This document shows positions 476-40,621 of a stretch of DNA of 64,000 nt, piece by piece. Source of the stretch: Octopus bimaculoides (taxonomy: Eukaryota). The notes beneath the pieces are model-generated. The model saw nothing but the letters and a program-made list of their open reading frames with translations. It had not been told where the DNA came from and did no database searches. Location of the stretch: positions 26,463,290 to 26,527,289 of the forward strand of contig NC_068986.1 of the NCBI RefSeq assembly GCF_001194135.2, given 5' to 3'. The position numbers and the translations under genes were made by a program. Each line of letters starts with the position of its first letter. The first letter of the stretch is position 1.

Positions 476-3400
476 CTTCATCAGTTCCCAACATATCCAG
501 AATGAGAATAGGGGGAACAGGTTTACCATATCTGGATAACTGAGACTCAAATTCTTTACCAAGCACTTCTTTACCATCTTCAAATAACTGAACCTGAAAA
601 GAGAACAAAAATTCATCCAGGAAATTTATTATCATTATAAAGTCACTAAGTAGCAGGAGCTTTTGTCTTTCAAAGTACTTGGGAACCTCACTAGAGCTAC
701 TGGCATAAAAAAAAGAACCCAGTACATACTGTAAAGTGGTTGGTTGGCATTATGAAGGGCACCCAACCATAGAAACCAAGTCAAAGCTGACATTGGAGCT
801 CAGCATAGCCCTGCAGTTTACCAAGTCCTGCTAAATGATCCAAGCCGCCACCGCCACCACCGAGTGTATCAAAGTGTATCAAAATTATGATTAGAATGTA
901 CAAATATGGCTAAACTTCAGTCATTGAAGATCAAAAGGGATATGTCAGTACATAACAAAAAAACACTGAAGTGAGTAGAACATAGTTAGCATGATTGGAG
1001 AGTACATTCTGGTCAGAGTCAATTCTTATTTGGAGTTACTGCCCTCCTTTGTTCAATCAATTTTTTTGATGATTAATTAACTATAGGAACACTAAGTACT
1101 GGTGATTAGGATAAAGCTCACTGTTTAGTGTATTTTTAATAAATTAATCTCAGCTTGACAAAGCTTTGCACATGCCAGGAAATTTATTATTTGCTGTTTA
1201 CTTATAAGAACAGCAGTTCTTAGTAAGCTATGAATGCTGGATACAATGTCTGTAGTTAATGAAGTGTAATAACACAGAAGCATGGCCTATTGTCATATGA
1301 TGTCATTTATAGCCCAGTTTAGTGTGTTTTCATGCACACATCGTCTACAAGAATTTCTCTTCCAAGACATTTACTGCAGCAAAGGCCTTTTCACGTTTGA
1401 ACAGGATATTAAGTTTACATAATTACTTACTACTTCTGTCAGTTCCAAGCTACCTGGATTGTGATCTTTAAAATAGCGAACAGCTTTCAGAACACTTTCC
1501 ATATGTTCCAGATATTTCTCCAGCCCACTGGCAATTGGTCTAGAAAAGCAGGCAGAAAAAAATATAACCATGAGGGAGAAAGAGAAGAGGGAATACACAC
1601 ATACACAAAGAAGAACGAGAGAGATGATATATCAGAGAATTTATAGATATGAAAGAAATAAAGAGGGAGTTAAAGAAAGATTCTAAATGCTTGTTTTTTT
1701 TTTTTGTTAATTCATATAACTAATTGACTGCTTTTACCAACTCTGTTGTAAATGAAATAGGTATCAATAATATAGTAAGATCATTTCAATGTCTTGTGCA
1801 GTCAACTTAGTATTTCATACTGACATATCTTACAAGCCATACATCTTACTACTAATGCTCTTTGCTCTGTGAGAACTTTCTCTGAGATCCAAGAACCAGA
1901 AAATATCTAATATTACTTAAACACTAATGATAATATTTGGAGGAAGATAAATGTATGAAACTCCTATTTCTCATTAGCAACACTAATTTTAGAAAAACGT
2001 CATCAGCATTTCCAGCAAACTTCATGAAGCTGCATCAAAAAAAAAACAAAACAAGGTATTCCTTTCAGAACAAAAGTGTTTCATTCCAGAACACTTTTTG
2101 GTTTTCTCTATACCCAAATAAAGCCAAATAATGCTCTCTACACTCATCCATTAATGGCAATCAAATAATCCAAACATATCCACTGATCTGATAAGATAAA
2201 TTCTTAAACTTTTGATAATCTATTTTTCATCCACCTCTTCTATTGATAACAAAGTGCTTATGAGAATTTGCTAGCTGCATCCATTCTTCATGAACGGAAC
2301 TACTGTGCTTGTCTCTAAGCTTTCCAGTATTTTCTGTCTCTTAATCTAACCACATCGTAAACACTACCTGCTATATTTCATTCCAATGTTTTGTATCCAG
2401 TAAAATTCTCTCTCCACTCATAGGTTCTCACAATACATTAACCTGCTTTTCCAAGTTTCAGATTAACTACATCAATATTAGTCATACTCCTCTTTCACTT
2501 TGCTATTTGGAGGGTATTCTTTGGACTAGGGTTAATGTCCTTCCTCCTTGTGCACACACACAGAGTATTGACGATAATTATGAAAAGATACATTAATTAA
2601 GGAACAAATTGATGCATTTTAGTGTAAAACATATAAAGAACTCAACAAAAAAGTTTCGTCAAAGACAACTCACCCTTCCTTGATGGCAAACTCTAGATCT
2701 TTAGCTATATGATAATATCCAAGTACATTGTCAAGAGTTGACATTGTTTTATCAATGTCTGGTGACATTAAGGAATGCAACTAAACATAAATATAAACAT
2801 ATAATTACAGAAGTCAGCTCAGTTTAATAGTTAAGCACTAGCAACAGTATGCTTTTCAATTATGTACAATTAGACAGGTTATTACAGAAATTTTGAATTA
2901 ACAGTATCAATACACAAATCTTACACATACACCCACCGAAAAAGTTAATTCCAAACTGCTACAACCATAGTGTGTTTGGCCAGTAACCTTGTGGGCATCG
3001 GTGCCAATTTTTTCTTCCTCCGTTTTCCCGTTCTTTGAACTTTCCTTGTTTCCAACGAAGGTCTCCGCCTGAAACATCATACTCTCTCTCTTTCCTTTCC
3101 TGAGCGTCTAATAACACTATCCATATCACGTCCTCACGTTGTTGTTTTTTGTTATTGTATTTTGTCTTTTTTTGAACTTATATATATATATATATATAAA
3201 ACATCTAATGAATCATTTATACTTGTGCGTAATTATCATATAGTAATATTGTTACATAAATAAATTAAATATAAATTAACAATTACACAAAAAAGAACTA
3301 TATAAGCCACTTGCACTCAATGGAAAATGAACAGTAAACACTAATTACTACAGACTATGAAGAAAGATCATTACATCACTTTGTTAAGAGTAATGGGGAA

Positions 3401-5008
3401 AGTCTCAAAAAGGATACTTTCTTGACGTCTTCTTAAGTTTTCTGTTTCTTGATATACTGGGAGAATTGTGTTTTCTAGCTTGCATAATCTTGTTTCAAAA
3501 CTGTTTAAGATGGCTAACATGTTCTGTGTATTTGTATTGCTTTTATTAAGAGACTCCTTCAGTACAGAGAGATTGTACATCTCCTGAAAAGAAATGACAA
3601 TAAAATGAGAAAATGAGACTTTACAATTGCTCTACAGTAATAAAAATCAAAACCAAAACATTTTAACATTAAATATGAGTTGTTGCTGTTGTTTAATATA
3701 AAGTTAGTCCATATTGAGCAGACCCATGACCATAAGTCAGCTCAATGAGAGTATTAAGAAAGGAAAGCTGACAATAATAACAGGAAACAGTAGAGTGGTG
3801 AAAGCATCTAGTGTAATGTTCCCATTATTTCAATCAGATCAAAGGTGGCGAGCAGGCAGAATCGTTAGCATGCCAGATGAAATGCTTAGCAATATTTTGT
3901 CTGCCACTACATCTGAGTTCAAATTCCGCTGAGGTCGACTTTGCCTTTCATCCTTTCAGGGTCGATAAATTAAGTACCAGTCAAGTACTGGAGTCAATGT
4001 AATCGACTGTCGCCCTCTCCACAGATTCCAGGCCTTGTGCTTATAGTAGAAAGGATTATTTCAATCAGAAAAGCAAGCTTCTTACCACACAGCCACTCCT
4101 GCGCCTGATGTTGAAAGTTATTCAAATTTTTAGTTCAACATTCTAAATTAGATAGATATGCTGATGCCATAAAAAAAGCACTCGTGCCAGCGCCTCGTTA
4201 AAAGCACCCAGAAAACACTGTAATGTAGTTGGAGTTAGGAAGGGCATATAGCCGTAGAAACGAAGCTAAATGAGACTGGAACCTGGTACAACTTTTCTGC
4301 ATGCCAACTCTAACCAAACCGTCCAACCCATGCCAGCATGGAAAACTGACATCACAAGAGATGACAATGATGAAGTCTCAGCGAGTAATAAACTTTCCAA
4401 ACATCAACTAGTAATGACAAATAGTTTAAGCGTTTTCCGCAAAGGTTTAGATAATGTAAATTTTCGGAATATTCTCAAAAGGAGAGTTTTTCTGAAGTCA
4501 ACGTTTGTCTTCAGAAAAAGTCTTTATGGGTAGTGCCTTGCAAGAATCAGTAGAGCGTTAGATAAAATGCTATGCGGTACTTATTCCGGTTCTCCACATT
4601 CTGAGTTCAAACTCCGGCAAAGTCAACCTTGCCTTTCATCTTTTCAGGATTGTTAAAATAAAAGTACCATTCAAGTACAGGGGTCGGCGATGTAATCGAC
4701 TTAATCCCCACCTCCCTCAAAATTTCCGGCTTTGTATCTATACCAGAAACAATTATTGTTATTCTTACAGTCTCTTCGAACTTCATCAATAAATCACTTG
4801 TTGACAACTTAAACGTAGTAAAAACAAAAGAAATTATAGGGAGTAGTTGAAATGCTGATATTTTACCACTCAAGACATTCCTTCATCTTGATGTCCTGAC
4901 CATCAGCTGTGGGTGATAATGACGGAAAGAACTTGTCAACAAAGCACTCACCTTCTCCAGTTTTCTGTCGATGTCTGCTTTAAGCACTGAAATATCATCC
5001 ATGTCCAT
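476..5008 (-). CDS. EXOC7: Exocyst complex component 7 (Exo70), 5' part; gene continues below position 1
   Basis: Exons complement(4952-5008, 3418-3583, 2674-2758, 1431-1539, 476-593). All introns GT-AG and phases chain 0,1,2,0,1. Translation MDMDDISVLKADIDRKLEK|EMYNLSVLKESL...SFETRLCKLENTILPVYQETENLRRRQE|NIDKTMSTLDNVLGYYHIAKD...|GPIASGLEKYLEHMESVLKAVRYF...|VQLFEDGKEVLGKEF...PVPPILILDML follows human Exo70 (SFESRLMKLENSIIPVHKQTENL; LFERGKEALESEF). Confidence 0.96.
3010..3160 (+). mobile_element. Degenerate Penelope-like tail in EXOC7 intron 2
   Basis: CCAACGA-AGG-TCTCCG-CCT-GAAAC-ATC at about 3052-3078 is a decayed hammerhead-like core, followed by TTTCCTGAGCGTCTAATAA as in the other tails. 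Confidence 0.45.
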
Positions 5009-5457
5009 TTTGACAAAAGGTATCTGCAGAAATCCTCACACACCTGACACCACACTTTAGACATTCACACACACAAACACCAACTCTGATGGTCGCCTTC
5101 ACTCTGCAAAAACACACACCTCCTTTCTCATTACACCTTCTCTCACTACTACTTAGCTTCTATTGTCACTTAGGGATACCATTTTATGGTTGTCGTTCTT
5201 GGGTTTAGACAAATGAATGATAAAATATAAAAACACAACTGAAATATATATTATACATATTGATATTAATAACTATATTAATTTACTATAAATAAAGAAT
5301 ACCGTAAATGTCGACTTATTATTCCACTAATTTCTTACAGCATTTCTACTTCGTTTTTGGTTGCAAGGTCACGTGGCTAACTATGGCGGCTTAAAATATC
5401 AACTCAATATTTATTTTAGTTTGTTTTCCTATTATCTGACAATCTAAACGAAAGAAA
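5009..5457. promoter_or_regulatory. Shared bidirectional promoter/5'UTR region of EXOC7 and WBP11
   Basis: 449 bp between divergent ATGs with no recognisable TE. E-box GTCACGTGG at 5368-5376 and YY1-like ATGGCGGC at 5383-5390. TSS positions are not determinable from sequence. Confidence 0.65.
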
Positions 5458-8400
5458 ATGGGACGCAGATCTATAAACACCACTAAAAGTGGGAAGTATA
5501 TGAACCCCACTGATCAAGCCAGTAAGTTTTATTTTTCGTATAGCAATAAATGTTTAGAATCGATGTTAAAGGAGCATCAATGAGTTTATTTATCCTAAGT
5601 GCCCCCCGACCAAATCTCAGCTCCTGAGTTTTCTGTAAATGGTTTTGTTATTTGACTCCTATTAATTTTTACGCTTGGAATTATTGCCTCGGTGATTTAT
5701 TTTCTTGACATCATTGCATTAATAAACTAATAATTAACATTACTTGTTATGCTAATTGGTCATTGAAGTGAAGGGTTTTGCAAACATATTTTGTGTTATT
5801 TTTTTCCTGAACTGAATTCAGTGAAATGGTAACAGAAAGTCCTTTCAGGCCGATTTTAGTTAAGCATGAAGAAAAATAACTGTCTACGCATTATTTTCTC
5901 CTTACAACACAAATGATATTGCAATGTTAAAACTGGGTGAATTGTGAACTAGAGAAAAAATACTGCGATAAGGAAATAGAAAAACAACGGAGCAAGGATA
6001 AATTATAATAAAATGTTATTCATCAAGAAATGAAATGGAATAAACTCTGATTATATTGACAATCTAGAGAAAATATATGACTAAACTTCTCTGATTTTGT
6101 ATTTTTGGTTTGAATGCATTTTGGAACTTTGGTATGTTGCATTTACATGACCAGATATTCCACTATGAGGTCTGCAATTTCAAACTTTTGCCAAAAGCCT
6201 TAGATATACTCTACTCTTTTACTTGTTTCAGTCATTTGACTGCGGCCATGCTGGGGCACCACCTTTAGTCGAGCAAATCGACCCCGGGAATTATTCTTTG
6301 TAAGCCTAGTACTTATTCTATCGGTGTCTTTAGCCGAACCGCTAGGTGACGGGGACATAAACACACCAGTATCGGTTGTCAAGCAATGCTAGGGGGACAA
6401 ACACAGACATACAAACACACACACATATATATACATATATGCGACAGGCTTCTTTCAGTTTCCGTCTACGAAATCCACTCACAAGGCTTTGGTCGGCCCG
6501 AGGCTATAGAAGATATTTGCCCAAGGTGCCACGCAGTGGGACTGAACCCGGAACTATGTGGTTGGTAAGCAAGCTACTTACCACACAGCCACTAAATATG
6601 TTTCTAATTGATATAAGACAAACATTCTTTTGATTGATGTCTTTTGTTGTTTAGCCCTAGGTAAGTATCGATTAAGCAGATCTGTAATCAGATGTATTCT
6701 TGCCACATCTGATCCAATCTATATTTCAAGCTTAATGTATCTAAGACAACATCATACATTATATTGTATGGTAAGTAGCTTGCTTACCAACCACATGGTT
6801 CCGGGTTCAGTCCCACTGCGTGGCACCTTGGGCAAGTGTCTTCTACTATAGCCTTGGACCGACCAATGCCTTGTGAGTGGATTTGGTAGGCGGAAACTGG
6901 AAGAAGCCTGTCGTATATATATATATATATGTGTGTGTGTATATATCTTTGTGCGCTTGTGTTTGTCCCCCAACATCGCTTGACAACCGATGCTGGTGTG
7001 TTTACGTTCCCGTAACTTAGCGGTTCGGTGAAAGAGACCGATAGAATAAGTACTAGGCTTACAAAGAATAAGTCCTAGGGTCGATTTGCTTGACTAAAGG
7101 CGGTGCTCCAGCATGGCCGCAGTCAAATGACTGAAACGAGTAAAACAGTAAAGAAAGTTTGGCTGCTGTTTCTAACAAGTCAAGTGATCACATAAAAACT
7201 TCCTCATTGTCTGGCTTTTAAATTAGTGCTCACCGAAGTAGATGAAAGCTTCCGTAAAAATGCATAGCATATGTCACACATTGATAACCACATTTATGAA
7301 TATGACAAGTGGATCACTTTTTATTTTTCATCTTATTGACCTGAAAATCTTCAGTCTGAGAGGTAGCAAGCAAATCTCATATGGTCTGCAACAAAACTAC
7401 AAACAGCAAATTCAGTACCAAACATTTCAATCAAAATATATATATATAAAGAAATGTAACTAGAAAGAATCCAGTAATAAATGACGTAATTAAGAAAAAA
7501 AGAACCATTAGAGAATTAGGTGCATCATATTATTGGATGGTATGTGGTAGAATCAATAGGGCATCTTTTAGTTACATACTGTGTTCAAATCCTACCAAGG
7601 TCAGCTTTATCTTTCATCTTTTCCATGGTTAAAATTAGTAGTAATTAAGTACTGGGGTCAGTATAATCAAGCATGTGTCCTCCTCTGAATTTATGGTCTC
7701 CTATCAATTGTAGGAATCAGTTTAAGTCTATTTGAAGATAGCAAGCTGGCAGAATTGTTAGCATGTTGGGCAAAGTGCTTAGCAGCATTTCTTCCATCTT
7801 TATATTCAGAGTTCAAGTTCTGCCAAGGTCATCTTTTTGGGGTTGATAAAATAAGTACCAATTAAGCATTGGGGTCCATGTAATCCCCTGAAATTGCTGG
7901 TCTTGTACCAAAATTTGAAACCAATTAAGTCTATTTGGGTCTTCTCACTAGCTTCCCAATTTTCACTACTTCTTCAAAGTAAGTAGTGGTTCTGAGGAAT
8001 ATCAACTGATCACATTTTAATTTTATGGGGTAGCAATGAAGCTAAGTATAAATTTTTTGTGTTTACAATTGTAGTAGTAAATACAGTCATAGCTATCTAG
8101 TTAAAAATGCTCACTTTGTAGCCATATGGCTCAAGTTTGATCCCACTTTGTTAAGCCTTGGGCAAGTGTCTTCTACTGTAGCTTTCAAGAAACCACTAGT
8201 TTGGGGTGAAATTTTGGAGATGAAAACTGTGTGGAAGCCCATTATATATATATATATATATCATTTGATGTGTATTTGTGTTTGTTTCTGTCAAGATTGT
8301 AAAACTTCACCATTGTTGACCTGGGACTAAACAGTTGATACACTCACTGAGTAATAAGTCAACATTAAGGGGCATAGCTGGTTGAAACCAGTTCATGCAA

Positions 8401-11393
8401 ATATTCAGCTCTGAGTAAAGCTATAAAAAACATAAATGAAAAGGAGTAATAAAAATTTATTATTTTAAAATGTCTAATTGTATGTTCTATTAATCAGACA
8501 TAACCTGTCATTCTTATTTCAGGAAAAGAGGCAAGAAAAAGGGAGTTAAAAAAAGTGAGTATTTGTTATCATGCACAAAACCAGTCTATTAAAACAAAAA
8601 TACGCTGTGATGACACAGACATTTTAGGTTTAATGCTTTACTTCATATCCTCCCCCTCATCTTCACCACCATCATTATCACCACCAACATCATGATTATC
8701 ATCTTCCATCATTGTCATCATTTCCACAGCCTGCATTACCATGAAAAATTGTTGAGGTTCACCTGATTCTGATAAAATTGACTTTGGTATTTTTACTTTT
8801 GTATTTTTAGAACAAAAAGCAGCGTATGCTTGTACGCCAAGCTGTGCTGAAAGGAAAAGACCCTACCAAAATATTACAAGAGATGGAGATAATCGACAAA
8901 ATGGGTAAACTTACTGTTTATTTTTATTTTATTGCATCTTTTTTTTTCCAGTATTTCTGACTAAAGTTCTTTATTTTAAAAACCAAACTTGGTGATCGTC
9001 AAGTACAGTTTAATTTTAACACCATAAAAATGATGAAAGGGTCCTAGTAATAATGTTCTGAATATAACTTGAAACTTATTGGGTCAGCTAACTAGTAATA
9101 CAACCTGTAGTCCCAATCTGGCCTACAAACTTAATGTAAGCACTTCATAAAGAAATTCTTTGTTTCCTTTATCAATTTTTACTTAACCCTTTAACAGCAA
9201 CATTAATTTTCATGATTATTCCAGTTATGATGTTGAATATCTACAAAAAATAGAATTGGTATTTTCTGCAAGTCACATTGCCCCAATAAAATCAACATAT
9301 CTCAGCAAAAAATAGTTCCAAGCATGCCATTCCTCAACAAAAGATCAATTGGTACATAAAGCTGCTTTCTGCAGTTAAGGTTAATGAAATTTCGAGGGAA
9401 TATATCTGATTTTTGCTGTAAAAGGGTTAAGGATCTATAAAATTCAGTATTAGAAAATAGAGTGCCCCCTGGCTGGCTCCTCTGCTGATGGCACGTAAAA
9501 ACCACCATCCGAACATGGTTGATACCAGTGCCCTCTGACTGGCTCCGCTGCCAGTGGCACATAAAAAGCACCATCCAAGTGTAGTTGATACCAGTGTCCC
9601 CTTACTCGCTCCTGTGCCAGTGGCACATAAAAAACACCCATTACAACTCTCAGAATGGTTGGCGTTAGGAAGGGCATCCAGCTGTAGATGAGTTCAGATT
9701 GGAGCCTTGTGCAGCCCACTGGCTTGCCAGACCTCAGTCAAACCATCCAACCCATGCCAACATGGAAAGTGGACATTAAAGAATGATGATGATGATGTTA
9801 TTTTTGTAGTAGCTTCAAACGAATCATTATCATCTTCATCATCATCATCATCATAATGATAAAAAGAAAGATAACAACATCCTGGCCTCTGATCTAGTCA
9901 GGTATCAATGTTCTCTTATTATCATAACTCAAAATATCAATCAATGATTTAGGTTAATACAAAAGAAAAAGTGATTACTTCATTTGGTAGATTTTTTAAA
10001 CAATAAATTGTTTTCTCTTTCATAAATGAATTGATCTACAAACACTAACAACATGTTATATTCTGTTGCAATACAGTTTACTTGAATAATCAACTCTAAG
10101 AAAGGAGAGAGTGACAAAAAAAAAAAAAACGTTTACTTGTTTGTTGGGAAATGGAAGTGGCCTGATTAACTCCATACTTACCTTGAGACCACAACCATCT
10201 CTGGCTCTCCTCCCTGTTCAACCTAACCAAAAATGTTTTAATTCTTCACTGTGTGTTGTGCTATACATGGCACATACTAATTTTTAAGTCATTAAATGTG
10301 GAGTGATTCCTTCGTTACAAATTTTATTATCACTTTTCATCATCATCATCATCTTAATCTCCACTTCTCCATACTTGCATGAGTGAGAGGGAATGCATTG
10401 AAGCAGATTTTCTAAGGATGCCTTTTCTCTCACCAGCCCTTGCTTGTTTCCTATTTGCTTTGTAGATATATCCTCTGCTCTTAATTTTTTTTTCCAGAAT
10501 ATGATCCAACCCAACCGCCCAAACTAAATGAGAAAGTCTTGAAAGACAAACGGAAGAAACTTAAAGAAACTTTCCTGCGAATTCTAAAGCTCTATGTAAG
10601 TAACCAGTTGAACCAATATATTATAGTGGGGTGGTGTCATTTGAAAGCTAAAACAATGTGAAGCGCATTGTGACCAGCGTTGTATAACAACATCCGATAG
10701 TCTGGTGGATGCCATGATACCATCATATATGTATATAAAAAATAGTTCTCTGTAACAATTGCTTGCTGAGTTTGAGCAATGTGCAGAATTTGAACAATAG
10801 CATGTAGATATGCAGTGTGCAGAAGTATACTTCTATCCTTTTCTCACTGTTTTCTTGGATGAAATTGATTTTGCTAATACATACTCATAGACACAAACTT
10901 ACAGCAAATATTAATACCATTACATATAGCTTTTTGTTTTGTTATTGAATTTCTGTGTTTATATGCATATGTTTATATTAGTGCTATATATTAATACATA
11001 CATACATACACACATACCACCACCACCATGACTACCATCATCAGCATCAGCACACACACACATATATATATATATCATCATTATCATCATCAACTACACA
11101 CAAGCCTGTAGCAAACATTATCAACTTTCAGATATCTTTCAGTTTTACTGCTAAATGAATGTCTGTGTATATTTGTATAGTATATATTAGTACATTGGTA
11201 TATGTATGTGTGTATGTATACATATATATATATATACATATATATATATAACAGGTATGGCCATGTGATTCTCCCAGTNNNNNNNNNNNNNNNNNNNNNN
11301 NNNNNNNNNNNNNNNNNNNNNNNNNNNNNNNNNNNNNNNNNNNNNNNNNNNNNNNNNNNNNNNNNNNNNNNNNNNNNNNNNNNNNNNNNNNNN

Positions 11394-11436
<43 letters not shown>

Positions 11437-18898: not shown

Positions 18899-18949
<51 letters not shown>

Positions 18950-23674: not shown

Positions 23675-23734
<60 letters not shown>

Positions 23735-24398: not shown

Positions 24399-24557
24399 TT
24401 ACACTTCTCCTGTTGAGAACTGTGTTTGCTTGGGTATCGTTGGCAAGATTACAGCCTCTGTGTCTTACCTTGGGTGGCTTGCCTTATATCCAACACTTGT
24501 CATGTACATTTTCATTATTAGCAACCTAAGCAACACATCTTTATTAAAACACTAATT

Positions 24558-24599
<42 letters not shown>

Positions 24600-24642
24600 C
24601 ATGGGCTCACAAGTTCAAAAGAAGCTGTGCCTGGCCACTTAG

Positions 24643-24679
24643 AATAAAAGGCTCAAAGACAAGTCTGAGAGTGAATAAA
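24643..24679 (+). terminator. Candidate WBP11 polyadenylation signals
   Basis: AATAAA at 24643-24648 and 24674-24679, about 250 bp after the stop. A further AATAAA at 25195-25200 has GT/T-rich sequence downstream. Which one is used is unknown. Confidence 0.3.
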
Positions 24680-24842
24680 ACATATATTGAATCCATAATC
24701 ATAAATCCAACTAAATGCATATTGTTTTGCTTATGGCTTTGCAAGAACAATTCCCAAACAATATATTTTGTTGGACTAATGATTGTGGATTAAATATCTT
24801 TTATATATATATATATGTATATATGTGTGTGTGTGTATATAT

Positions 24843-24873
<31 letters not shown>

Positions 24874-25864: not shown

Positions 25865-26620
25865 CAAGGTCTGATCAATAAGCATCTGGACTGGTGCTCT
25901 AAAGACAACTGTAACACGTACCAAAGTAGTCCCCGTCGGAAGCCACACACTTAACCTACTGCTGTTTCCATTGATGGAAGCATTCCTGGAACTCATTTTT
26001 TGGGACAATCAGCAGCTGCCTCGTTGCATTCACTTTGAATTCTTTGACGTCCTGAAATCTTCCCTTCAAGCGGAATTTGATTTTTATAAAGAGGCAAAAG
26101 CTGCAAGGGTTGAAATCTTTGGAATACGGTGACAGTCAGACTTGGGGAATGCTGCACCTTGCCAAAAGCTGCTGCATAAGCTGTGCTGAATGGGCAGATG
26201 CATTGTCAGCCGAAAGCAGTTTTGGCATGCGTCTCATACCCAAATCGTCAGTGATAACGGACTGAACTGAACCGTAATTAATCAGCACATCCTCTGATAA
26301 CTCACGGATGATGATCTGACAATTTCCTCTCACATATGCACACACATCTGCAATGTTTTTCTCAGTTCTGTTGGTTGCAAGTCTCCCAGAATGTTCATCA
26401 CTCTCGACATTTTTTTGGCTCATACACTCCTCTTTATACACCTTCTGTAACTTTGCGTAGGCCTCTGAGCAGGTGTTGCCAAGCTTTTGGCAAAATTTGA
26501 TGCAGATTCATGGTCAGTGTGATGATCACATGCTACACACGTTTCTTCCAAGCATTACTGTAAACAACAGGTGAGCTAGAACATTAAAACTTAGTGCAAA
26601 TGCACAGCAATCATGTTTGT
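25865..26620 (-). mobile_element. Internally deleted mariner remnant
   Basis: TA|CAAGGTCTGATCAATAAG terminus. The translation jumps from the HTH region (INYGSVQSVITDDLGMRR..PKLLS) straight to DNASAHSA..., followed by C-terminal ECFHQWKQQ*VKCVASDGDYF. Right TIR not identified. Confidence 0.7.
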
Positions 26621-27769
26621 ATGATGGCTGCAACTTGCTTTAAAGCAAGACCATCACTTGATTGTTCTCTTAAATATGAGCAGCTTTTCAGTCTTATTAG
26701 GAACCTTTAACTCTTGCAAAGATGTGGCAATGATGGGTGCCTCTTAAAGTAGGTGTTCAGAGAGAGAGAGTTTACCACTCATACTGACATATGCCTTTAT
26801 TCCATTATCTAATTCTTCAGTGAATGTTTTGCCTGTCTACTGCCTGCCATAGCTTGCAGCACATAATAGAGATGTTAAAACAATCAAGTGAGACGCTGAG
26901 TTTGATGTTTACTGGGATTGAACATGAAACAATGTGGTTGCAGAGCAAACTTCTTAATCACACAGCCATATCTGTCTGCTGGATTTTCTTTTTCTTTCAT
27001 ATTTGTTTTTCTACTAGATTTTCTTTTTTTGTTTTCCTATTTGTTTTTTTTTTTTCCAAGCAGTAATAATTTATTGGCCTTTAGGGGGAAAAGAGAAACC
27101 TCAACAAAATGTTAGACACTATTAGAACAGTGTTTCTCAACCATTTTTTTGTTTTATCTATGGACCCCTTTCATTTCTATTTTACTCCAGTGTAGGGAGT
27201 AGTCATTTGATGTTTACAAAATCCTATTATATTTTTATGATTAAATATTATTAGGAATTGTATAAAATGTTCTTTTAGTATTTTGGATATTGTAGATGTA
27301 TAACCAGTTCATTCTTTTATCTCTTACTTGTTTCAGTCATTAGACTGTGACCATGCTGGGGCACCACCTTGAACTTTCTTTTAAGCCTGGTACTTATCCT
27401 ATCAGTTACTTTTTGTTGAATCACTAAGTTACAGGGACATAAACCCACTAACATCGGTTGTCAAACTGGTGGAAGGCAGACCCCGGTTGAGAACCACTGT
27501 AGTAGGAGAAAGGGCTTATTTTCATTTAGCCTGTGTCATAAATTTAATGTCTGTTTTTGATCAAGTAAATCTCTGATCAAAGGTGTTCCAGCAATGACCA
27601 TCCCACCTTATTTCCAGACATTATATTTAAAAATACATTATCCCATGTGCCATACTTTTTCTAAAGATGGTAAGGTGTGAGATAAGGGAAATTTGGCTAC
27701 TATTTCTAACAGGCCAAGTGACCACGTAGAAACTGTTTTATTGGCCCATTTCATCAGCCAGCAACCAGG

Positions 27770-27990
27770 AGTCAGCTTTCCATGACACTCTTGTGTTGTA
27801 TGCAGACAATCACCCAGGCTCTTGCCTCCAGTCCATTCCTTGATGTTGTCAGCACACAAACATCTTTGATGACCTCTTGCTCTCTTCCTCTCCATAATAT
27901 GGTCTTGGGTAGTGACTTATGGCACATTGTATGTTCAAAATATGATGACTACTGTGGACTTGATTTTTGACAATAGTTGTCTTTCGCCTC
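27770..27990 (-). mobile_element. RTE-like LINE 3'-end fragment
   Basis: IMERKRARGHQRCLCADNIKEWTG resembles the RTE C-terminal EGKRxRGRxRxRWxDNIKEWTG. Confidence 0.6.
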
Positions 27991-29289
27991 TCAGGTTTTC
28001 CAGTTCTGCAGCGTTTATTACTTTTTCTTCTCTATCACTATGTACATTGTCCAAGTTTCTGCCTCATAGAGGACAACTAGCATAATATAAGTTTACTTGC
28101 TTCAATTTTGGTGCAGTGTTATGTCTTCTGATGTGAAGATTGTTTTCATTCTTATAAATGTTGTTTTAGCCTTATTTAAAAGGCAAAGACAACGGTTATT
28201 AAACAGAACAAAAGGAAGAAAATATAAAACTAGATGGAAAGAAGCTTGAACAAATAATAAATCAGGGAGATCACTATGTAGAAGATACTCAAAGAATAAA
28301 TAAGGTTAAAATTTATTGTCCCTTTTAATATTGCATTTATATCTGCTGGCAAAATGGCAAAGTTGTTAGAGCATTAGATGGAATGGTTAGTCCACATTAC
28401 TCTATAAGGAGCATAGGGCCAATTTCTTTAGTGTATATATTTCTTCCAGGATGGGTTGCTGGTCTGTCACAGGATTACTCATTTTTGCCAGCTGAATGGA
28501 CTGGAGAAACGAGAAATGAAGAATACAATGCACCACCCAGCCCAAGAATTGAAACCACAATTTTACAATGATGAGTCCTACTCCTTAACTGCTAAGCCAT
28601 TTGCCTTCACATTGGATGGAGTATTTTGCAGTATTTGTCACAATACTTGTGCTCTGAGTTCAAATCTTGCTAATGTCAATTTTACCTTTCATTCTTTTGG
28701 AGTTGGGGTAAAAAGTTCTGTGTTCTGTAGCAGGAATATTTAGCAGACATGAGCATCTATGAATAAAAACTGAATCACTGTACCTGATGTAGAAACAAGT
28801 AAATGCTATGAATGCAATTCATCCAATTATTGATGATGTTATCAAGCACTGATTTAGAACAGGGTCTCATTAACAATTCCATTTTTGGTGCCATTTTCTC
28901 TCTGAAAGCAAAAGTTACATATAGATCTGTTTTTCTTCTAACCAGTGGTGTGTGTAAGCGATTAGTGGTGTGTGCCTTGAACTGGTCAGCTACAAGTGTG
29001 GCTGTAGCAGTCAAGACCAATGGCTGATGACGTCAGCAGCACAACCAAAATCACCTAGCTGCTAAAATCACATAATGAAGGCTATTACTTTTTTCTTGAT
29101 ACACAAATATATTACAAACTGCTGAACTGCTTTAACTTGGTCAGGACATTTTTCTGTTATTGGTTCTGATGATAACACATTGTTCTGTTTCACAATAAAA
29201 TAAAATAATTTTGTATTTAAAAATCCAAACTGAATTTGTGTTCTTGCATTTATTGATATCAACTCAACTTAACCAAATTGTTTCACTGG

Positions 29290-30977
29290 TGACAACCCCA
29301 CACTCGTAAAGGACATTATGCAGCTTCACAACATATTAAACAAGTTCAAAAACATCACTGAGATGTCAATACACTTCCCCAGCAAGAATGTTGCACAAGC
29401 ATCAAACACTAACCAGTAAAAGCAGGTCAAAGAGAAGCTCCTTCAGAGCCTTTATGTGAGCTTGGGAGTTGGCAAGAGTTGAATATGTTACCATCAGTAG
29501 GGAAACAGATGTAGTTGTCCTTATGCAAGTCTTCCTTGGTCTCTCACAGCATCGTGCTGAAAATCATGAAGGGAAGTGGGGCTAGGACACAACTCTGTTT
29601 CACACTTGTTCTCAATAGGGAAGGGGTTTCAACAGGTATTTGAGCTGGCCCCACTGGCCCTTGTGTAGAGGATGGAGGACAAAGAGAGACTTGAGCCACT
29701 CCAGGATTCTCCACAGCCTATACTTACTAACCATATCAAATGTCTTGGTCAGATCTTTGAAAGCAGCGTAAAGGGCCATGTTTTGCTCTCTGAATTTCTC
29801 CTGTATATGGTGGAGGACAAAGACCACAATGATGCTTTGGACAGATTTCATCAGTTATGGCAGAGATGAGTCTTTCTAGAAGAACATACACCGGTATCTT
29901 GTCTGCAAGGGAAAACAACATGATGCCTTTGCAGTTGGAGAATTCTGACTTTTCTCCTTTGGACAGAGATACTTTTGTGGTGTTGTGCAGGTCATGCAGG
30001 ATTTCCCTTCTCACCCAGCTCCATTAAAAGTGGTTAGTGAGTTTCTGAAGTCAGTTCCCACCATACTTGCATATTTCTGCTGGAAGACCATCTACACCAG
30101 GAACTTCATGATTTCTCAGCTTAGCAATCACTGCCTTTATCTCACTGATGGAAGGTGTGTTGTCCAGCTCTGTTTTTGCCTCCTGTTGTGATATTCTGGG
30201 AGTGCTTGCACAGAGTGTATGCCTGTCCCCAAACAGATTTGCAAATTGTTTAGTCCAGTGATGCATGATGTCATTATTCTCTTTCAGTAAAATTGATCCA
30301 TCAACAGAGTGCAGAGGGGCTTGAGTTTGATTGGTAGGACCATATACTGTGTAAAATGCATTATAGAAAGATGTCTGCCTGGTCAGCATAACATTGTGCA
30401 TTGTGTTCTCTCAGCAAGTGTTTCCCACCATTTTTTCTGGATATCTTGCAGTTTCCACTGGAGGATGCTGCTGGTAGACATGTAGGAAGACTTGGCTAAC
30501 AAGCTGTTGGGGCTGGCAAGCACTGTTTGGTGACAAGTGCACTTCTAGTAGAGAAGTTACTGGATCTCGTCATCCTTTTCATCAAACCAGTCTTTGTTCT
30601 TTCTCAATGAGAAACCCACAACATCGGTTGTTTCAGCAGAAGGCACAGTTCAAGACAACCTGAAGACATGGATGGTCAAAACACTGGCATCTGCTTGACA
30701 ACATCCTGTTGTGACAGACAGATATGAAGGACATGCTCCATAAGAGTCATGCAACATAAACCATAGGTTGGATTGTGAAAAAGTCAGATTGTCCATCAAG
30801 CATGTCAAGAAGAGAACTCCTCTAACAAAGAAACTAAAGAACAGTAAACTTCCACAACAGCAGGAAGAGCTTCAGTCAAGTTTGAACAGTAAGCATTTGA
30901 ACATTGAAGTAGCTGAAACAGACCCACAGAAGTTCTGGTAAGGCCTGAAGATTAAGATATGGGAAACGGCAGCCAAG
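29290..30977 (-). mobile_element. RTE-clade LINE fragment (endonuclease end, linker and RT) with an inverted 5' segment
   Basis: Minus strand 30625-29290: DVVGFSLRKNKDWFDE, KLRNHEVPGVDGLPAEI, SNCKGIMLFSLADKI, QEKFREQNMALYAAFKDLTKTFDMVS, VKQSCVLAP. Plus strand 30626-30977: LFQQKAQFKTT*RHGWSKHWHLLDNIL...FW*GLKIKIWETAAK. Confidence 0.88.
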
Positions 30978-32344
30978 GTATACATACATGCACACATACA
31001 TACATACACACATACATAAATATATTCATTCATTGTGAATGATGCCTATAGCAGTTTTTATTGTTGAATCACAAAGTCACAAACATAAACAAGCTGCACT
31101 GGATTTTGAGCAGGATCAATGTAAAAAACAAACAGGCATATACACATAAATATATATGCAAACACATAAATATGATGGGCTTCCATACAGTTTCTACTTA
31201 CCAATTTTCACTCACAATGCATTGGTCTGTTGGCTATAATAGAAGGTACTTGCCTAAGATTGAACTCAAAATTATATGGCAGCAAAGCAAACTTCTTAAC
31301 CATACATCTATGCATGCGTTTATAAATGTTGTTGAGAAAACTGAAAAACTGGTGCTTTATGAAGGAAGCTCTTTGAGATATTTGTTTTGCATTGAATTAT
31401 GGACACTCCTCATGTCACCGTTGCCAGCAGAAATGCAATGAATCAGTAATAGGCTGGAATAACTGGAAATCTGTAACCAATTACACTTTTGTCCACTTAT
31501 TGTAGTATAAATATATAAAAAAATGCCTCTGAATAGATTTGATTCATGAGAAATCTGATGATGTTTGCGAGATTTAACATGAGCAATGTTCCTCTAAAGT
31601 TGGCCATTATCATTTTAGATATTTTTATATTAATGTTTTCTCTCTACTGACTTGAAGAAGTTCTTTGGTTAAAGACTTTGTTACAGACATGTAGCAGGTT
31701 CTCCACTAAGTTTTTACAGTATATTGAAAAATTTCTACACTGATTAGGTTTCTTTTCTTAGAAGTTTCCTTCTTTTCATGACGTTAGAAACTTAACTAAT
31801 CCCAAATTTACAACAGAATTTTTCTGAACTGAATCAATGCGGTGGTTAACATATGACTACTATCATTCTTCCCTGGGCTAGTTTCATGAGAGGCAGAGGA
31901 TTTGCTAATCTGATTCACAAGCTGGGAAGAATTATGGAAGATTATCATTAAGGAAAAACTTCTGAGAGTCATATGTGTGTAATAACTTAAGGACTTTGAC
32001 TTTGTAAATTGGCAAGTTATATGGGTTACCTTATGAGACTACAGGGTGCCTGCAAAAGTTATTAATACCATTTATAGTGACTTAGACTATTTGTCTTTAG
32101 CTAAAACCAGAGAGCATGGCATCATGCTTTAATCCTTTAGCATTCAGATTGATCTGTCTTATTTATTCATATTGTTTTGAATTAACCATGTGCTATTTTG
32201 TAGCTTCAAGATTTCAATGATGGGATTGTTTATTTTTAGAATGACATTGTAGTGTAGGTATGATTGATGGGATCTGGCTGATTTCAACATAAAACATGTA
32301 GAATAAATGCTAAAGAATAAACAGATTAAACGCTAAAGAGTTTG

Positions 32345-32570
32345 TGGTCTGTGGCTCACATTCTTGATATGGAGTTCAAGGATGATAAACCGTCTACTTA
32401 GCTTCTAATAAACCTTTAATCTGTTACCTTAGACATAGATCTTGAAGCCAATCATGGAAAAATTAAAGTGATGTGCATCAGTTTCAGGACAGATGGAAAT
32501 TCATTCAGATTATCTTATGATGACAACGTAGAAGATTGTGCAAAGCATCAAGTACCTTAGATCCATGTAT
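32345..32570 (+). mobile_element. LINE RT remnant
   Basis: Decayed LDMEFKDD...LEANHGKIKVM...KHQVP segment resembling the YADD-region-to-KYLG stretch. Confidence 0.35.
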
Positions 32571-33039
32571 AATTTGAAAGTGATCTGCACATGTTACTGT
32601 TTAGGCTAAGGTAACATTACAGTAACTGGATCAACATTCTTTTCTCAAGTTGCAACAGTTCAGTACAATGGTTCTCTCAGAGCTACTGTTTAGCAAACAT
32701 GGTCGATAATAAAGTATATGGGGAAGAAAATTAGGTTCTTTGCTGTAACCTGTTATGGAGTTTCTTTGCGTTGGCAAGTGGAAAAACTGTGTCATAAGGA
32801 CATATGTGTGTGATGTGATAATGGGCATGTTGGGCTTAATATGTGACAATGGCATCATCAGTAATTTACATCGTACTAAACATACCAGCATAATACCATC
32901 AGTACAAAAAATGCATACCAACATAACTAGTACTAGAAGTACAAACATTACATATCAATGTGGTTAGTTTCAACAGTACAACCATGATTCAATTAAATAC
33001 ATGTTGAGAATCTCACTAAAAATGTGCATGCGTGGTACA

Positions 33040-33640
33040 GGATGAAGTGCAGGTTGTTGAAGGATTGCTTAATTTGGCAGAATGATGTGACAAAAGTCTT
33101 TGATAAATTTGAGAAATGGGTTTTTACAGTTCTCTTGTTTATTCTGCATGAAAGTGAAGGAGGCAAATGCAGACTGAGATTCTTGAACATATGGAGGAGT
33201 CTATTTAAAAAAATCTATTTTTTGTGGTATGTGTGTGTGTGTGTGTGTGGAACTATCACATCTCTGAAGAACAAAGACCATTATAGAAGTGGTTGAAAGA
33301 TGGAGAGAGGAGACTGCATGCCTGTGGGTCAGTGGCTGGAGCATGTCCATAAGTGACTGAATACCAGTTAGCAAAGTGGCTTTTCTCTTGATGCATAGCA
33401 ACAACACTGTCCCAGAAAAGGGAGTACTACATCACTGTGGGTTTCACTTCAGTCTTGTAAAGTGTCAGTTGTTGCTGGGGACTCGAATATCTTTTGGCTT
33501 TCATGCAGTCCTAGCTACACTAAGAATGTGTATTTGCCTAATGGAAACAAAGTTCAGCACTAGGAGTGACTGTGAGGTCTCTAGCGGAGTGCTGCTCATG
33601 TTTATTAAGGATGTAGAATAGTGGTGTTCTCTTTCATGAG
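33040..33640 (-). mobile_element. CR1/L2-like LINE RT C-terminal fragment
   Basis: KAKRYSSPQQQLTLYKTEVKPTVM*YS and KRKATLLTGIQSLMDMLQPLTHRHAVSSL resemble the post-RT segment of CR1/L2-group LINEs. Heavily decayed. Confidence 0.6.
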
Positions 33641-35148
33641 TGGTGCTTGAGTTTTTGAATTCTGATAAATCAGATAAATATCTTCCTCTTTTAGAATCTT
33701 ACCTATAAAAATATGAAAACTTTGTAATTGTTATTTACTTTTAATGCTTGGTGTCATACAGAATGGCAAAACGGTAACTCTTTTCTGGCTTCTGTAAATT
33801 ACTGCAACGTTTAAAACATGTTCCAATTTCTAAAGAGGGTTTCAGAAGAATACAAGCATTGAGAAAACACACTCAAATGTAACAGTGTATTTATTATTTC
33901 AGTCAAATATAAAATGGACGGAGGTTTTTTTCAAAGGCTCAATAGAAAAATCTCACAAGGAATATATATAACAAAGTACATAAGACTTTGATATCTATTT
34001 CTTAAGATTTCCATTGTAATCAATCTAACAACCAAGATTAAAAGATTAAGGCATTGCCACAGAGTAGAAGACTAATATAAAGACACAATTAAAGAGACAC
34101 AAAACATACATACACTCATATACAAACAACATTCACACATGCATACATAAAACAAACACTTAAGATATATGATTTAGACAATAGATTAAATATGTCCTTG
34201 TAGAATGCAACTTGGACTGTGTGGCTCTGTCCATCAATACCATATGGAAGCTATGAGTAACTGCAGTCAACAAATATTAGAACCGGAAGTTGAAGAATGT
34301 ATTCAATGTTTTTAATTTTTGTAAATTTTTTTTTTCCAAATTTTTATTAATTTTTTTTTTTTTCAATAGATTTTCAAAACATGAAAACTGAAAACCTACC
34401 ACATGGCTAAATTATCTTCTTAGAAATCTGATGCTTTGTTGTAATGAGCTGAAGGAAGATGTAGTTGACAACAATTGGGTAGAAAGTTCATTGTGTTAGA
34501 ATTTAAAGGTAATAATGGAGAATACACTTTATTGAAGTTCATATCTATGACAGCAAATGGAAAAACAAACTCCGCCCATTGTTAAGATATCAGTCGATCC
34601 TCTACAGCAACTTCAGGAGACCAAAATCATTAATGGTTCATTAAGTCCTAGTTACCAAGTGATTGTTCACATAAGAAAAAGAAAAAAAAATGGGTGGGAG
34701 GGGCTAAATTAAAATAAAATATAGCATCTTAAAATTTTTCAACATTGACCAGTGGTACAATATTTTTATCTCATTTTATATATTTTGTTATTTTTGTGTT
34801 GCTCTGTTTTATCTTTTTTTTCTTTTCTTTCTTTTTTGTTGTAAAATAAAACAAAACAAAACAAAACAAACTACCAAACCAAGCCAAAATGCTGCTTTTT
34901 AGGTTACTGCAGGATGTATGAATCTGAGAGGAGATTGGAAAGGCAAACAAAAAGTAGTAATATATCACCAAGAAATTATTAAGATTAGAAAGATATGTTT
35001 AGAAGGTGTTTAATGTTAGTAGAAGTATCGTAGAATTAGAAACCAAATAACTTTTTGGTGTTTAAATTTTACTGATCTTTTTGTAAACCATTTTCCAAGA
35101 TGATGTTGTTATATGTCACACTCAGTTACCATTCTCTTTTTGTCTGGT

Positions 35149-35958
35149 TTACATTATTGTATCAATATCAAAAGTTGCTGTCATATCGTCAGAATGGGTT
35201 CGAGATTCTGCCCAAGGGTGGGGATTCTCAGGTAAAGGTGAACTTGATTCAGGTGTGTTCAGTCCATCAGCACTGTCACATATAGTAAATATAGTGTTGT
35301 TAAGAAAGTCTCGAGTCTCAGCACTAAGATTGAAGCTGTTGCTACACATGTCATTCCCAGCCCACCAATGTTTGATACCAGTACCTTTTACAGTTAAATC
35401 GAGGGGGTTATTAGTTAGAGAACCATCCAGTGAATGCCCCCGACCATTCATGGAAGAATTTACAGGCTTGTTTAATATATTGCTACAGAAAAAATTGTCC
35501 ATGCTGATATCGTCAGCGTTGGATCCATCAGAATCTGGAGGACTAAGCGCCATCAAAGAACCGTAATCTACTTCATCAATAATTGTTTCTGTTTTCACTT
35601 TCACATCGCCAACCATGATGTCTTGGTCAAACAGGAAGTTCAGGTTAAAGTCATTACTCACTTCATCAGTGGGAGGCAGGTGAATGACATTTGACAGCAT
35701 TTCTGCAGCTTTGTTACCTTCCCAATCAGGTCCTGATTGGGAATTCAAACTGTCCGATTGACAGCTAATGTCTGACCGACTTCGCTTCAAGGGTGTGTAG
35801 TTAAGATCATTGTGCTTTCTTTTCTTCAATATACCATTTTCTATCTGGTCAATATATTCAGGATTCACCTTCCAGAAACCTCCTTTACCAGGTTCATCTT
35901 TTCTCCGAGGAACTTTTTGGAAACATTTATTCAAAGACAAATTGTGACGTATAGAATT
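35149..35958 (-). CDS. FOXJ1: Forkhead box protein J1, last coding exon (second half of the forkhead domain plus C-terminus); upstream exon not found in window
   Basis: Polypyrimidine + CAG acceptor at 35959-35961, then phase-0 [35 protein letters not shown] (FoxJ1-type recognition helix and wing), open to TAA at 35149-35151. C-terminal DLTVKGTGI and HPWAES resemble vertebrate FOXJ1 DLTVHGRHI and HPWDES (from recall), favouring J1 over J2/J3. Confidence 0.92.
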
Positions 35959-40553: not shown

Positions 40554-40562
40554 GTGCGTGCG

Positions 40563-40621
<59 letters not shown>

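What the first reader, a model, noticed from the sequence alone, without database searches (positions are those of the whole stretch)
476..35958. EXOC7 and FOXJ1 linked in the same order and orientation as in human
Seen: FOXJ1 lies about 30 kb upstream of EXOC7, both on the minus strand, with only WBP11 between them. Knowledge (recalled): human EXOC7 and FOXJ1 are neighbours at 17q25.1 with the same relative order and strand, while human WBP11 is on chromosome 12. Octopus genomes are known for losing ancestral bilaterian microsynteny. Inference: this may be a protostome-deuterostome conserved pair of the developmental-TF plus housekeeping-bystander type, held by FoxJ1 enhancers in or near EXOC7, with WBP11 inserted or lost in one lineage.
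Basis: partly seen in the sequence, partly recalled or inferred. Interest (0 to 1): 0.75.

Follow-up and report, generated by a model that had tools for sequence, protein, structure and literature searches.

The report
Ancient FoxJ1–WBP11–EXOC7 gene block in octopus
The octopus window holds three neighbouring genes (FoxJ1, WBP11, EXOC7) in the same order and orientation as in a snail, an acorn worm and amphioxus, a real ancestral gene block that was apparently already shown as an example in 2013.

Summary
The window is Octopus bimaculoides chromosome CM046606.1. It holds the last exon of FoxJ1 (35149-35958, minus), a complete WBP11 (5458-24398, plus) and the first five coding exons of EXOC7 (477-5008, minus).

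WBP11 is not a passive insert. It lies head-to-head with EXOC7, with 449 bp between the start codons, and tail-to-tail with FoxJ1. The assembly gap sits in a WBP11 intron. WBP11 exons are colinear across it and the contig ends overlap, so the scaffold is not mis-joined.

The same arrangement (FoxJ1 forward, WBP11 reverse, EXOC7 forward) with 23-37 kb spacing occurs in Littorina, Ptychodera and Branchiostoma. Mammals keep FOXJ1-EXOC7 but have WBP11 elsewhere (human 12p12.3). The sea urchin Diadema has broken the block (1.9 Mb apart, order inverted), and Gigantopelta and Mya probably have too.

So this is an ancestral bilaterian three-gene block, and WBP11 left it in vertebrates. The block is apparently published: the Figure 5 legend of Simakov et al. 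2013 names FoxJ, WBP11, Exoc7 and MGRN among conserved clusters. The proposed FoxJ1-enhancer mechanism is untested here, and I found no cross-phylum non-coding conservation. The octopus case adds little that is new.

The parts
477..593 (-). EXOC7 coding exon 5 (about residues 140-178). The rest of the gene runs off the left end of the window.
   Evidence: tblastn of O. bimaculoides EXOC7 P0316. The stop-to-stop frame is listed.
1431..1538 (-). EXOC7 coding exon 4 (about residues 104-139)
2673..2759 (-). EXOC7 coding exon 3 (about residues 75-103)
3419..3583 (-). EXOC7 coding exon 2 (residues 20-74)
   Evidence: A phmmer search with this exon finds full-length Exo70-domain proteins.
4952..5008 (-). 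EXOC7 coding exon 1 (residues 1-19, ATG at 5008-5006)
5009..5457 (.). 449-bp spacer between the divergent EXOC7 and WBP11 start codons, a putative shared bidirectional promoter. It carries TCACGTGG (E-box) and ATGGCGGC (YY1-like) at -89 to -66 from the WBP11 ATG.
   Evidence: The same head-to-head arrangement occurs in Littorina, amphioxus and Ptychodera.
5458..24398 (+). WBP11, complete coding region. Approximate exons: 5458-5521, 8524-8556, 8811-8903, 10498-10595, [gap], 12129-12216, 13690-13760, 15140-15236, 17152-17217, 19266-19546, 20983-21200, 22029-22214, 23007-23276, 24296-24398.
   Evidence: tblastn with human WBP11 written from memory, frame and splice inspection, Pfam Wbp11 at 4.3e-18 on the spliced N-terminus, and nucleotide matches to Wbp11 exons of Littorina, amphioxus and Ptychodera. 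Exon ends are approximate.
11279..11393 (.). Assembly gap inside WBP11 intron 4, within a (TA)n microsatellite. The flanking 66 bp are duplicated, so the contig ends overlap.
   Evidence: exon colinearity across the gap
24399..35148 (.). Intergenic region between the convergent 3' ends of WBP11 and FoxJ1 (about 10.75 kb). No gene is called. It contains ORFs that look by eye like mariner- and reverse-transcriptase-derived fragments but gave no Pfam hit.
35149..35958 (-). FoxJ1 last coding exon with stop codon (residues 174-442). It encodes the C-terminal half of the forkhead domain, from [13 protein letters not shown] onward.
   Evidence: Pfam Forkhead 2.7e-15 on the exon and 9e-38 on the full protein.
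35959..64000 (-). Part of the single 34.6-kb FoxJ1 intron, which splits the forkhead domain after ...SWQ. Exon 1 lies beyond the right end of the window.

Best explanation
The window carries an inherited bilaterian microsynteny block of three unrelated genes: FoxJ1 (forward), WBP11 (reverse) and EXOC7 (forward), shown here on the opposite strand. Octopus kept it from the protostome-deuterostome ancestor.

Shown:
- The identity of the three genes.
- Their order and orientation.
- Continuity of the scaffold across the gap.
- The same configuration in a gastropod, a hemichordate and cephalochordates. The FoxJ1-EXOC7 half is kept in mammals: the order is shown in sheep, and the strands rest on my memory of the human map.
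- Hence WBP11 is ancestral to the block and moved away in the vertebrate lineage.

Inferred (mechanism):
- The WBP11-EXOC7 pair is most likely held together because the two housekeeping genes start 0.36-0.5 kb apart and share a bidirectional core promoter. A break between them would damage both.
- FoxJ1 is attached through its 3' flank. It stays there either because some of its regulatory DNA overlaps WBP11/EXOC7, or simply because a 20-40 kb block is a small target for rearrangement.
- I rate constraint of some kind at about 0.6-0.7 and pure inertia at about 0.3.
For: Gene identity:
- FoxJ1 exon is 100% identical to P0001.
- EXOC7 exons are 96-100% identical to P0316, the differences falling only at residues overhanging the splice junctions.
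- Wbp11 Pfam hit at 4.3e-18.

Synteny from record coordinates:
- Branchiostoma CM033050.1: FoxJ1 13,179,633-13,187,618 (+); WBP11 (-) first codon 493 bp from the EXOC7 start; EXOC7 13,224,874-13,240,615 (+).
- Ptychodera CM083797.1: FoxJ1 18,165,018-18,173,275 (+); WBP11 (-); EXOC7 18,207,033-18,224,549 (+).
- Littorina CM074560.1: FoxJ1 36,013,575-36,015,477 (+); a gene with the Pfam Wbp11 domain (-) 362 bp from EXOC7; EXOC7 36,038,282-36,054,702 (+).
- The gap from FoxJ1 to EXOC7 is 30.1, 37.3, 33.8 and 22.8 kb in octopus, amphioxus, Ptychodera and Littorina.

Supporting evidence:
- Protein accession order places FoxJ1 and EXOC7 one or two numbers apart in O. vulgaris and Argonauta hians.
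- Sheep: RNF157, FOXJ1 and EXOC7 are listed together in one 99-kb interval.
- Human WBP11 is at 12p12.3.
- FoxJ1 has the same two-exon structure and intron position in seven species.
- A YY1-like ATGGCG motif lies 73-116 bp upstream of the WBP11 ATG in octopus, amphioxus and Ptychodera. An E-box plus ATGG(C/T)GGCTT composite is shared by octopus and Littorina.

Literature:
- The Simakov 2013 Fig. 5 legend names Exoc7, FoxJ, WBP11 and MGRN.
- That paper reports 469 bilaterian blocks against 157 expected by chance.
- Irimia 2012 describes 5'-5' pairs under 1 kb apart as a signature of shared promoters.
Against: The linkage is not obligatory.
- Diadema setosum has FoxJ1 and EXOC7 1.88 Mb apart in inverted order, with no WBP11 within 10 kb of EXOC7.
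- Accession numbering suggests separation in Gigantopelta and Mya.
- Pecten has no gene within 10 kb downstream of FoxJ1.
- Vertebrates separated WBP11 from EXOC7, and Ptychodera has a DUF4385 gene between them. The shared promoter can therefore be split.
- No non-coding sequence matched between phyla.
- The promoter motifs are 6-8 bases long and were found post hoc.
- No expression, chromatin or contact data were available.
Confidence: 0.88

Rival explanations
1. Genomic regulatory block. FoxJ1 enhancers lie inside or beyond WBP11/EXOC7, which are bystander genes, and this entanglement is what has preserved the block.
For: - The block combines a developmental transcription factor with two housekeeping genes, the classic composition described by Irimia 2012.
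- It survived in octopods, whose lineage is reported to have undergone large-scale genome reorganisation.
- The FoxJ1-to-EXOC7 spacing is similar (23-37 kb) in four genomes of different size.
- Simakov 2013 speculates that such linkages preserve cis-regulatory landscapes.
Against: - Only exons match between phyla; no conserved non-coding element was found.
- The block is broken in Diadema, which still has FoxJ1, and probably in Gigantopelta and Mya.
- WBP11 left the block in vertebrates.
- From memory, not checked here: a roughly 1-kb human FOXJ1 promoter is enough for ciliated-cell expression in transgenic mice.
Confidence: 0.3
2. Neutral persistence. The block is ancestral but is kept only because it is small and rearrangement breakpoints rarely fall in it. 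No selection acts on the linkage.
For: - Simakov 2013 estimates that 157 of 469 blocks would persist by chance within conserved macrosynteny.
- Several lineages have broken the block without obvious consequence.
- FoxJ1 and EXOC7 stay on one chromosome in all six chromosome-level pairs compared, as expected from slow, local rearrangement.
Against: - Order and orientation of all three genes are identical in four phyla after more than 500 million years.
- This includes octopods, whose lineage reorganised heavily.
- The 5'-5' pair lies less than 0.5 kb apart in three lineages, a signature linked to co-regulation.
Confidence: 0.3
3. Chance convergence, or an assembly artefact. The octopus adjacency arose independently or comes from a scaffold mis-join at the gap.
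For: A gap of estimated length lies between EXOC7 and FoxJ1.
Against: - WBP11 exons 1-4 lie left of the gap and exons 5-13 lie right of it, colinear with a single Littorina gene.
- The contig ends overlap by 66 bp.
- Accession order in the O. vulgaris and Argonauta annotations suggests the same neighbourhood.
- The identical configuration occurs in three other phyla.
Confidence: 0.01

Closest known systems
Conserved orthologous gene cluster with FoxJ, WBP11, Exoc7 and MGRN E3 ubiquitin ligase (Simakov et al. 2013, Nature 493:526, Figure 5; PMC4085046)
   Same: The same three orthologous genes are tightly linked, and the paper presents the cluster as an example conserved across diverse metazoans. 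The human neighbour RNF157 is, from memory, the MGRN-type ligase. Sheep lists RNF157-FOXJ1-EXOC7 together.
   Different: Only the figure legend could be read. That the four names belong to one panel is my inference. Octopus was not among that paper's genomes. The MGRN/RNF157 neighbour could not be found within 10 kb upstream of FoxJ1 in any locus fetched.
Conserved 5'-5' gene pairs with a bidirectional promoter, such as HSPD1-HSPE1 (Irimia et al. 2012, PMC3514665)
   Same: WBP11 and EXOC7 are divergently transcribed. Their starts are 449 bp (octopus), 362 bp (Littorina) and 493 bp (amphioxus) apart, and the orientation is conserved across phyla.
   Different: Promoter sharing and co-expression were not measured. 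The pair was separated in vertebrates and interrupted by a DUF4385 gene in Ptychodera.
Genomic regulatory blocks: a developmental regulator plus bystander genes that carry its enhancers
   Same: A developmental transcription factor (FoxJ1) lies next to housekeeping genes in deeply conserved synteny.
   Different: No conserved non-coding elements, enhancers or chromatin contacts are shown. The linkage has been lost in some lineages.

Membership tests
Ancestral bilaterian FoxJ-WBP11-Exoc7 microsynteny block | The three genes are orthologues of FoxJ1, WBP11 and EXOC7. | tested here: met
   - FoxJ1: best hits across phyla are all FoxJ1, with similarity over the whole C-terminal tail. The intron position is shared by seven species. 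The forkhead domain matches human FOXJ1 at 63/81 positions, against 50-52/81 for FOXJ2 and FOXJ3 (human sequences from memory).
- EXOC7: Exo70_N and Exo70_C domains.
- WBP11: Pfam Wbp11 at 4.3e-18.
- No formal phylogeny was built.
Ancestral bilaterian FoxJ-WBP11-Exoc7 microsynteny block | [quoted passage not shown] | tested here: met
   Protostomes: Octopus (window) and Littorina. Deuterostomes: Ptychodera and Branchiostoma. There are zero to two intervening genes.
Ancestral bilaterian FoxJ-WBP11-Exoc7 microsynteny block | Same gene order and relative orientation. | tested here: met
   FoxJ1 and EXOC7 are co-directional with FoxJ1 upstream, and WBP11 is antisense between them, in all four lineages.
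Ancestral bilaterian FoxJ-WBP11-Exoc7 microsynteny block | An MGRN/RNF157-type ligase lies next to FoxJ1. | not testable with these tools
   The window ends inside the FoxJ1 intron. The 10 kb upstream of FoxJ1 in L001 and the other loci gave no tblastn hit to MGRN1 written from memory.
Bidirectional-promoter gene pair | 5'-5' orientation with less than 1 kb between the genes. | tested here: met
   449 bp between the ATGs in octopus. 362 bp in Littorina and 493 bp in amphioxus between the WBP11 first codon and the annotated EXOC7 start.
Bidirectional-promoter gene pair | Shared promoter activity and correlated expression. | not testable with these tools
   The only evidence is sequence motifs, YY1-like and E-box, at similar positions.
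Genomic regulatory block | Regulatory elements of the target gene lie inside or beyond the bystander genes. | tested here: inconclusive
   blastn of the window against loci from four other phyla found matches only in coding exons. Such deep non-coding conservation is rarely expected, and no cephalopod genomic comparison or chromatin data were available.
Genomic regulatory block | Synteny is maintained wherever the target gene is maintained. | tested here: not met
   Diadema keeps FoxJ1 but has it 1.88 Mb from EXOC7 in inverted order. Gigantopelta and Mya are probably broken too.

The most novel reading that the evidence does not exclude
The block survived the coleoid genome reorganisation because ancient FoxJ1 (motile-cilia programme) enhancers sit in WBP11 or EXOC7 introns or in the 10.7-kb region between the WBP11 and FoxJ1 3' ends. 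That would make this small locus a tractable place to find regulatory elements of bilaterian age. The lineages that broke the block would then have moved or replaced those elements.
Probability: 0.25. Interest if true: 0.45.

Novelty: already known. Interest (0 to 1): 0.25.

Why it matters
The result confirms that the locus is correctly assembled. It also shows that octopus keeps a textbook-type ancestral gene block even though coleoid genomes were heavily rearranged.

It corrects the evolutionary reading. WBP11 belongs to the original block and was removed in vertebrates, not added in octopus.

The locus combines two proposed causes of conserved gene order: a promoter shared by two housekeeping genes, and a developmental regulator beside bystander genes. 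It is small enough (about 30-70 kb) for direct tests. As a discovery it adds only another species to a published example.

Tried and rejected
I used stop-to-stop frames and tblastn instead.
- A search for the N-terminal half of the forkhead domain in the window found nothing. The explanation is a 34.6-kb intron, with exon 1 outside the window.
- The word-indexed protein search with the spliced EXOC7 N-terminus missed the octopus protein, although the query equals its residues 1-178. This is a tool limitation. I reached EXOC7 orthologues through a phmmer search with one exon.
- Single WBP11 exons gave no Pfam hit or only a sub-threshold one. The spliced N-terminus passed.
- Look-ups of non-longest isoforms or GenBank-only models failed. 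I used longest isoforms and RefSeq members instead.
- Rfam found no RNA gene in the window, so an intronic non-coding RNA is not an evident cause of linkage.
- Supplements of Simakov 2013, Irimia 2012 and Touceda-Suarez 2020 are not held. The main texts of the latter two do not name these genes.
- No MGRN/RNF157 was found in the fetched flanks.
- Mis-join and chance convergence were rejected, as set out under the rival explanations.


Full report
**What the window is.** The last-exon frame at 35149-35958 (minus strand) is identical to residues 174-442 of the 442-residue Octopus bimaculoides 'forkhead box protein J1-B' (P0001). That protein is encoded on chromosome CM046606.1 of assembly GCA_001194135.2. 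The fetched locus L001 matches window 25149-64000 at 100% identity. Window position w therefore equals record position 26,463,289 + w.

**FoxJ1.**
- Only the last coding exon is in the window. It starts at 35958, exactly the finding's end coordinate, with [13 protein letters not shown], the second half of the forkhead domain (Pfam Forkhead 2.7e-15).
- Motif and tblastn searches found no first half of the domain anywhere in the window.
- The reason is a single intron of 34.6 kb. The gene spans 35,959 bp, and exon 1 (residues 1-173) lies at about window position 71,100, beyond the right end.
- The same two-exon structure, with the intron at the same point of the forkhead domain, occurs in Pecten, Littorina, Branchiostoma, Ptychodera and Diadema. 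There the introns are only 0.4-10 kb.
- Hits across phyla cover the whole C-terminal tail and are all named FoxJ1.
- The forkhead domain agrees with human FOXJ1 at 63 of 81 positions, against 50-52 for FOXJ2 and FOXJ3. The human sequences were written from memory.

**EXOC7.**
- The O. bimaculoides protein (P0316, 711 residues, Exo70_N and Exo70_C domains) maps to five minus-strand exons: 4952-5008, 3419-3583, 2673-2759, 1431-1538 and 477-593.
- These encode residues 1-178 only. The rest of the gene runs off the left end of the window.
- The finding's start coordinate, 476, is the boundary of exon 5.

**WBP11.**
- It is on the plus strand, contrary to what 'between them' might suggest.
- The ATG is at 5458 (MGRRSINTTKSGKYMNPTDQ) and the stop at 24396-24398 (...KDDVYEEFMKEMKNLL).
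- About 13 exons were located by tblastn and frame inspection.
- The spliced N-terminus hits Pfam Wbp11 at 4.3e-18.
- WBP11 is therefore head-to-head with EXOC7, with 449 bp between the start codons. It is tail-to-tail with FoxJ1, with 10.75 kb between the stop codons.
- No other gene is called in the 10 kb downstream of FoxJ1. The ORFs there look by eye like transposon fragments but gave no Pfam hit.

**The gap.**
- N 11279-11393 lies in a (TA)n tract inside the WBP11 intron between exon 4 (10498-10595) and exon 5 (about 12129-12216).
- Exons 1-4 are on the left contig together with EXOC7 exon 1. Exons 5-13 are on the right contig together with FoxJ1.
- At nucleotide level the exons on both sides match the single annotated Littorina Wbp11 gene in colinear order. 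Window 5455, 8809, 12122, 13676 and 17144 match L008 9642, 7278, 6218, 5810 and 4466. tblastn places exon 4 in between.
- The last 66 bp before the gap recur at bases 5-71 after it, with 64 identical. The contig ends overlap, and the 'gap' is a failed merge in a microsatellite.
- The scaffold is not mis-joined here.

**Synteny elsewhere.** I obtained FoxJ1 orthologues and EXOC7 orthologues, then their genomic coordinates.

| Species (record) | FoxJ1 | WBP11 | EXOC7 | FoxJ1 end to EXOC7 start |
|---|---|---|---|---|
| Amphioxus hybrid assembly (CM033050.1) | 13,179,633-13,187,618 (+) | (-), first codon 493 bp from the EXOC7 start | 13,224,874-13,240,615 (+) | 37.3 kb |
| Ptychodera flava (CM083797.1) | 18,165,018-18,173,275 (+) | 622-residue gene (-), confirmed by tblastn | 18,207,033-18,224,549 (+) | 33.8 kb |
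| Littorina saxatilis (CM074560.1) | 36,013,575-36,015,477 (+) | gene with the Pfam Wbp11 domain (-), 362 bp from EXOC7 | 36,038,282-36,054,702 (+) | 22.8 kb |
| Octopus (window, flipped) | forward | reverse | forward | 30.1 kb |

- In Ptychodera a small DUF4385 gene sits between WBP11 and EXOC7.
- The flipped octopus arrangement (FoxJ1 forward, WBP11 reverse, EXOC7 forward) is identical to the other three.
- Consecutive protein accessions suggest the same neighbourhood in O. vulgaris (CAI9724208 and CAI9724210-12) and in Argonauta hians (GAB1611129 and GAB1611127, on one 1.1-Mb scaffold).
- In sheep, RNF157, FOXJ1, EXOC7, ZACN, GALR2, SRP68 and EVPL are listed together in one 99-kb interval. 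This fits my recollection of human 17q25.1.
- Human WBP11 is at 12p12.3.

**Where the block is broken.**
- In the sea urchin Diadema setosum both genes are on OZ188193.1, but 1.88 Mb apart and in inverted order. No WBP11 lies within 10 kb of EXOC7.
- In Gigantopelta and Mya the two genes share a chromosome, but their accession numbers differ by about 570 and about 6,900. The Diadema difference is 177 for 1.9 Mb, so these two are probably separated. This is indirect evidence.
- Pecten has no gene in the 10 kb downstream of FoxJ1, which is inconclusive.

**Interpretation.**
- An identical order and orientation of three unrelated genes in Mollusca, Hemichordata and Cephalochordata, plus the FoxJ1-EXOC7 half in vertebrates, means the block was present in the protostome-deuterostome ancestor.
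- WBP11 is an original member that left the block in the vertebrate lineage. It was not inserted in octopus.
- Two mechanisms discussed in the literature fit the anatomy. One is a 5'-5' pair less than 1 kb apart sharing a promoter. The other is a developmental regulator beside bystander genes (Irimia 2012).
- For the first, the spacing is conserved at under 0.5 kb in three lineages.
- In addition, a YY1-like ATGGCG motif lies 73-116 bp upstream of the WBP11 ATG in octopus, amphioxus and Ptychodera. An E-box plus ATGG(C/T)GGCTT composite is shared by the two molluscs. These motifs are short and were found post hoc, so they are only suggestive.
- For the second, I found no support. All nucleotide matches between the window and loci of the other phyla fall on coding exons. 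The block has also been broken in some lineages.
- Neutral persistence of a small block remains a serious alternative. Simakov 2013 estimates 157 of 469 blocks by chance.

**Novelty.**
- The Figure 5 legend of Simakov et al. [quoted passage not shown]
- From memory, RNF157, the gene upstream of FOXJ1 in mammals, is the MGRN-type paralogue. One panel therefore almost certainly shows this very block. The figure and supplement could not be read.
- Cephalopods are reported to retain 275 metazoan microsyntenies, no fewer than the 216 reported for scallop. Retention of one block in octopus is therefore not exceptional.
- The finding is correct and neatly resolved, but it is not new.

Noticed in passing
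window 35959-64000 and L001 10525-45141: The single FoxJ1 intron is 34.6 kb in octopus, against about 0.4-0.5 kb in Pecten and Littorina and 6.7-10 kb in amphioxus, Ptychodera and Diadema. That is about a 70-fold expansion within molluscs, at a conserved intron position inside the forkhead domain.
   Followed up: partly
window 38706-39709 (-): A Mos1-type mariner transposase remnant lies in the FoxJ1 intron (Pfam HTH_48 at 2.5e-15 on 39278-39709), split over several frames. It is bracketed by two 162-bp copies, 99% identical, at 37370-37531 and 40392-40553.
   Followed up: partly
window 48869-49849 (-): Two adjacent long ORFs (220 and 104 residues) lie in the FoxJ1 intron. The second carries an ISXO2-like / IS1595 DDE transposase domain (9e-10).
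   Followed up: partly
window 29736-30401 (-) and 26136-26441 (-): ORFs in the WBP11-FoxJ1 intergenic region look by eye like reverse-transcriptase and mariner fragments. Pfam gave no hit.
   Followed up: partly
window 5369-5392; L008, L005 and L010 upstream of WBP11: The motif TCACGTG-N6-7-ATGG(C/T)GGCTT lies about 66-89 bp upstream of the WBP11 ATG in octopus and Littorina. AAnATGGCG (YY1-like) lies at -116 in amphioxus and -73 in Ptychodera. This may be a conserved core element of the shared promoter.
   Followed up: partly
L005 2473-5905 (+): In amphioxus a 976-residue LRR plus TIR (Toll-like receptor type) gene is nested on the opposite strand within the WBP11 gene range.
   Followed up: no
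L010 6615-7622 (+): In Ptychodera a 244-residue DUF4385 gene sits between the WBP11 and EXOC7 starts, widening the head-to-head spacer to 3.6 kb.
   Followed up: no
Mya arenaria chromosome of 71,556,252 bp: Mya has at least four distinct FoxJ1-like proteins more than 90% identical to each other, plus a 925-residue 'FXJ1A-like' model, all on the chromosome that also carries EXOC7. This suggests lineage-specific FoxJ1 duplication.
   Followed up: no
window 11213-11278 and 11398-11464: A 66-bp sequence is duplicated on both sides of the assembly gap, 64/66 identical. The true sequence is probably shorter than the scaffold, with no missing unique DNA.
   Followed up: yes
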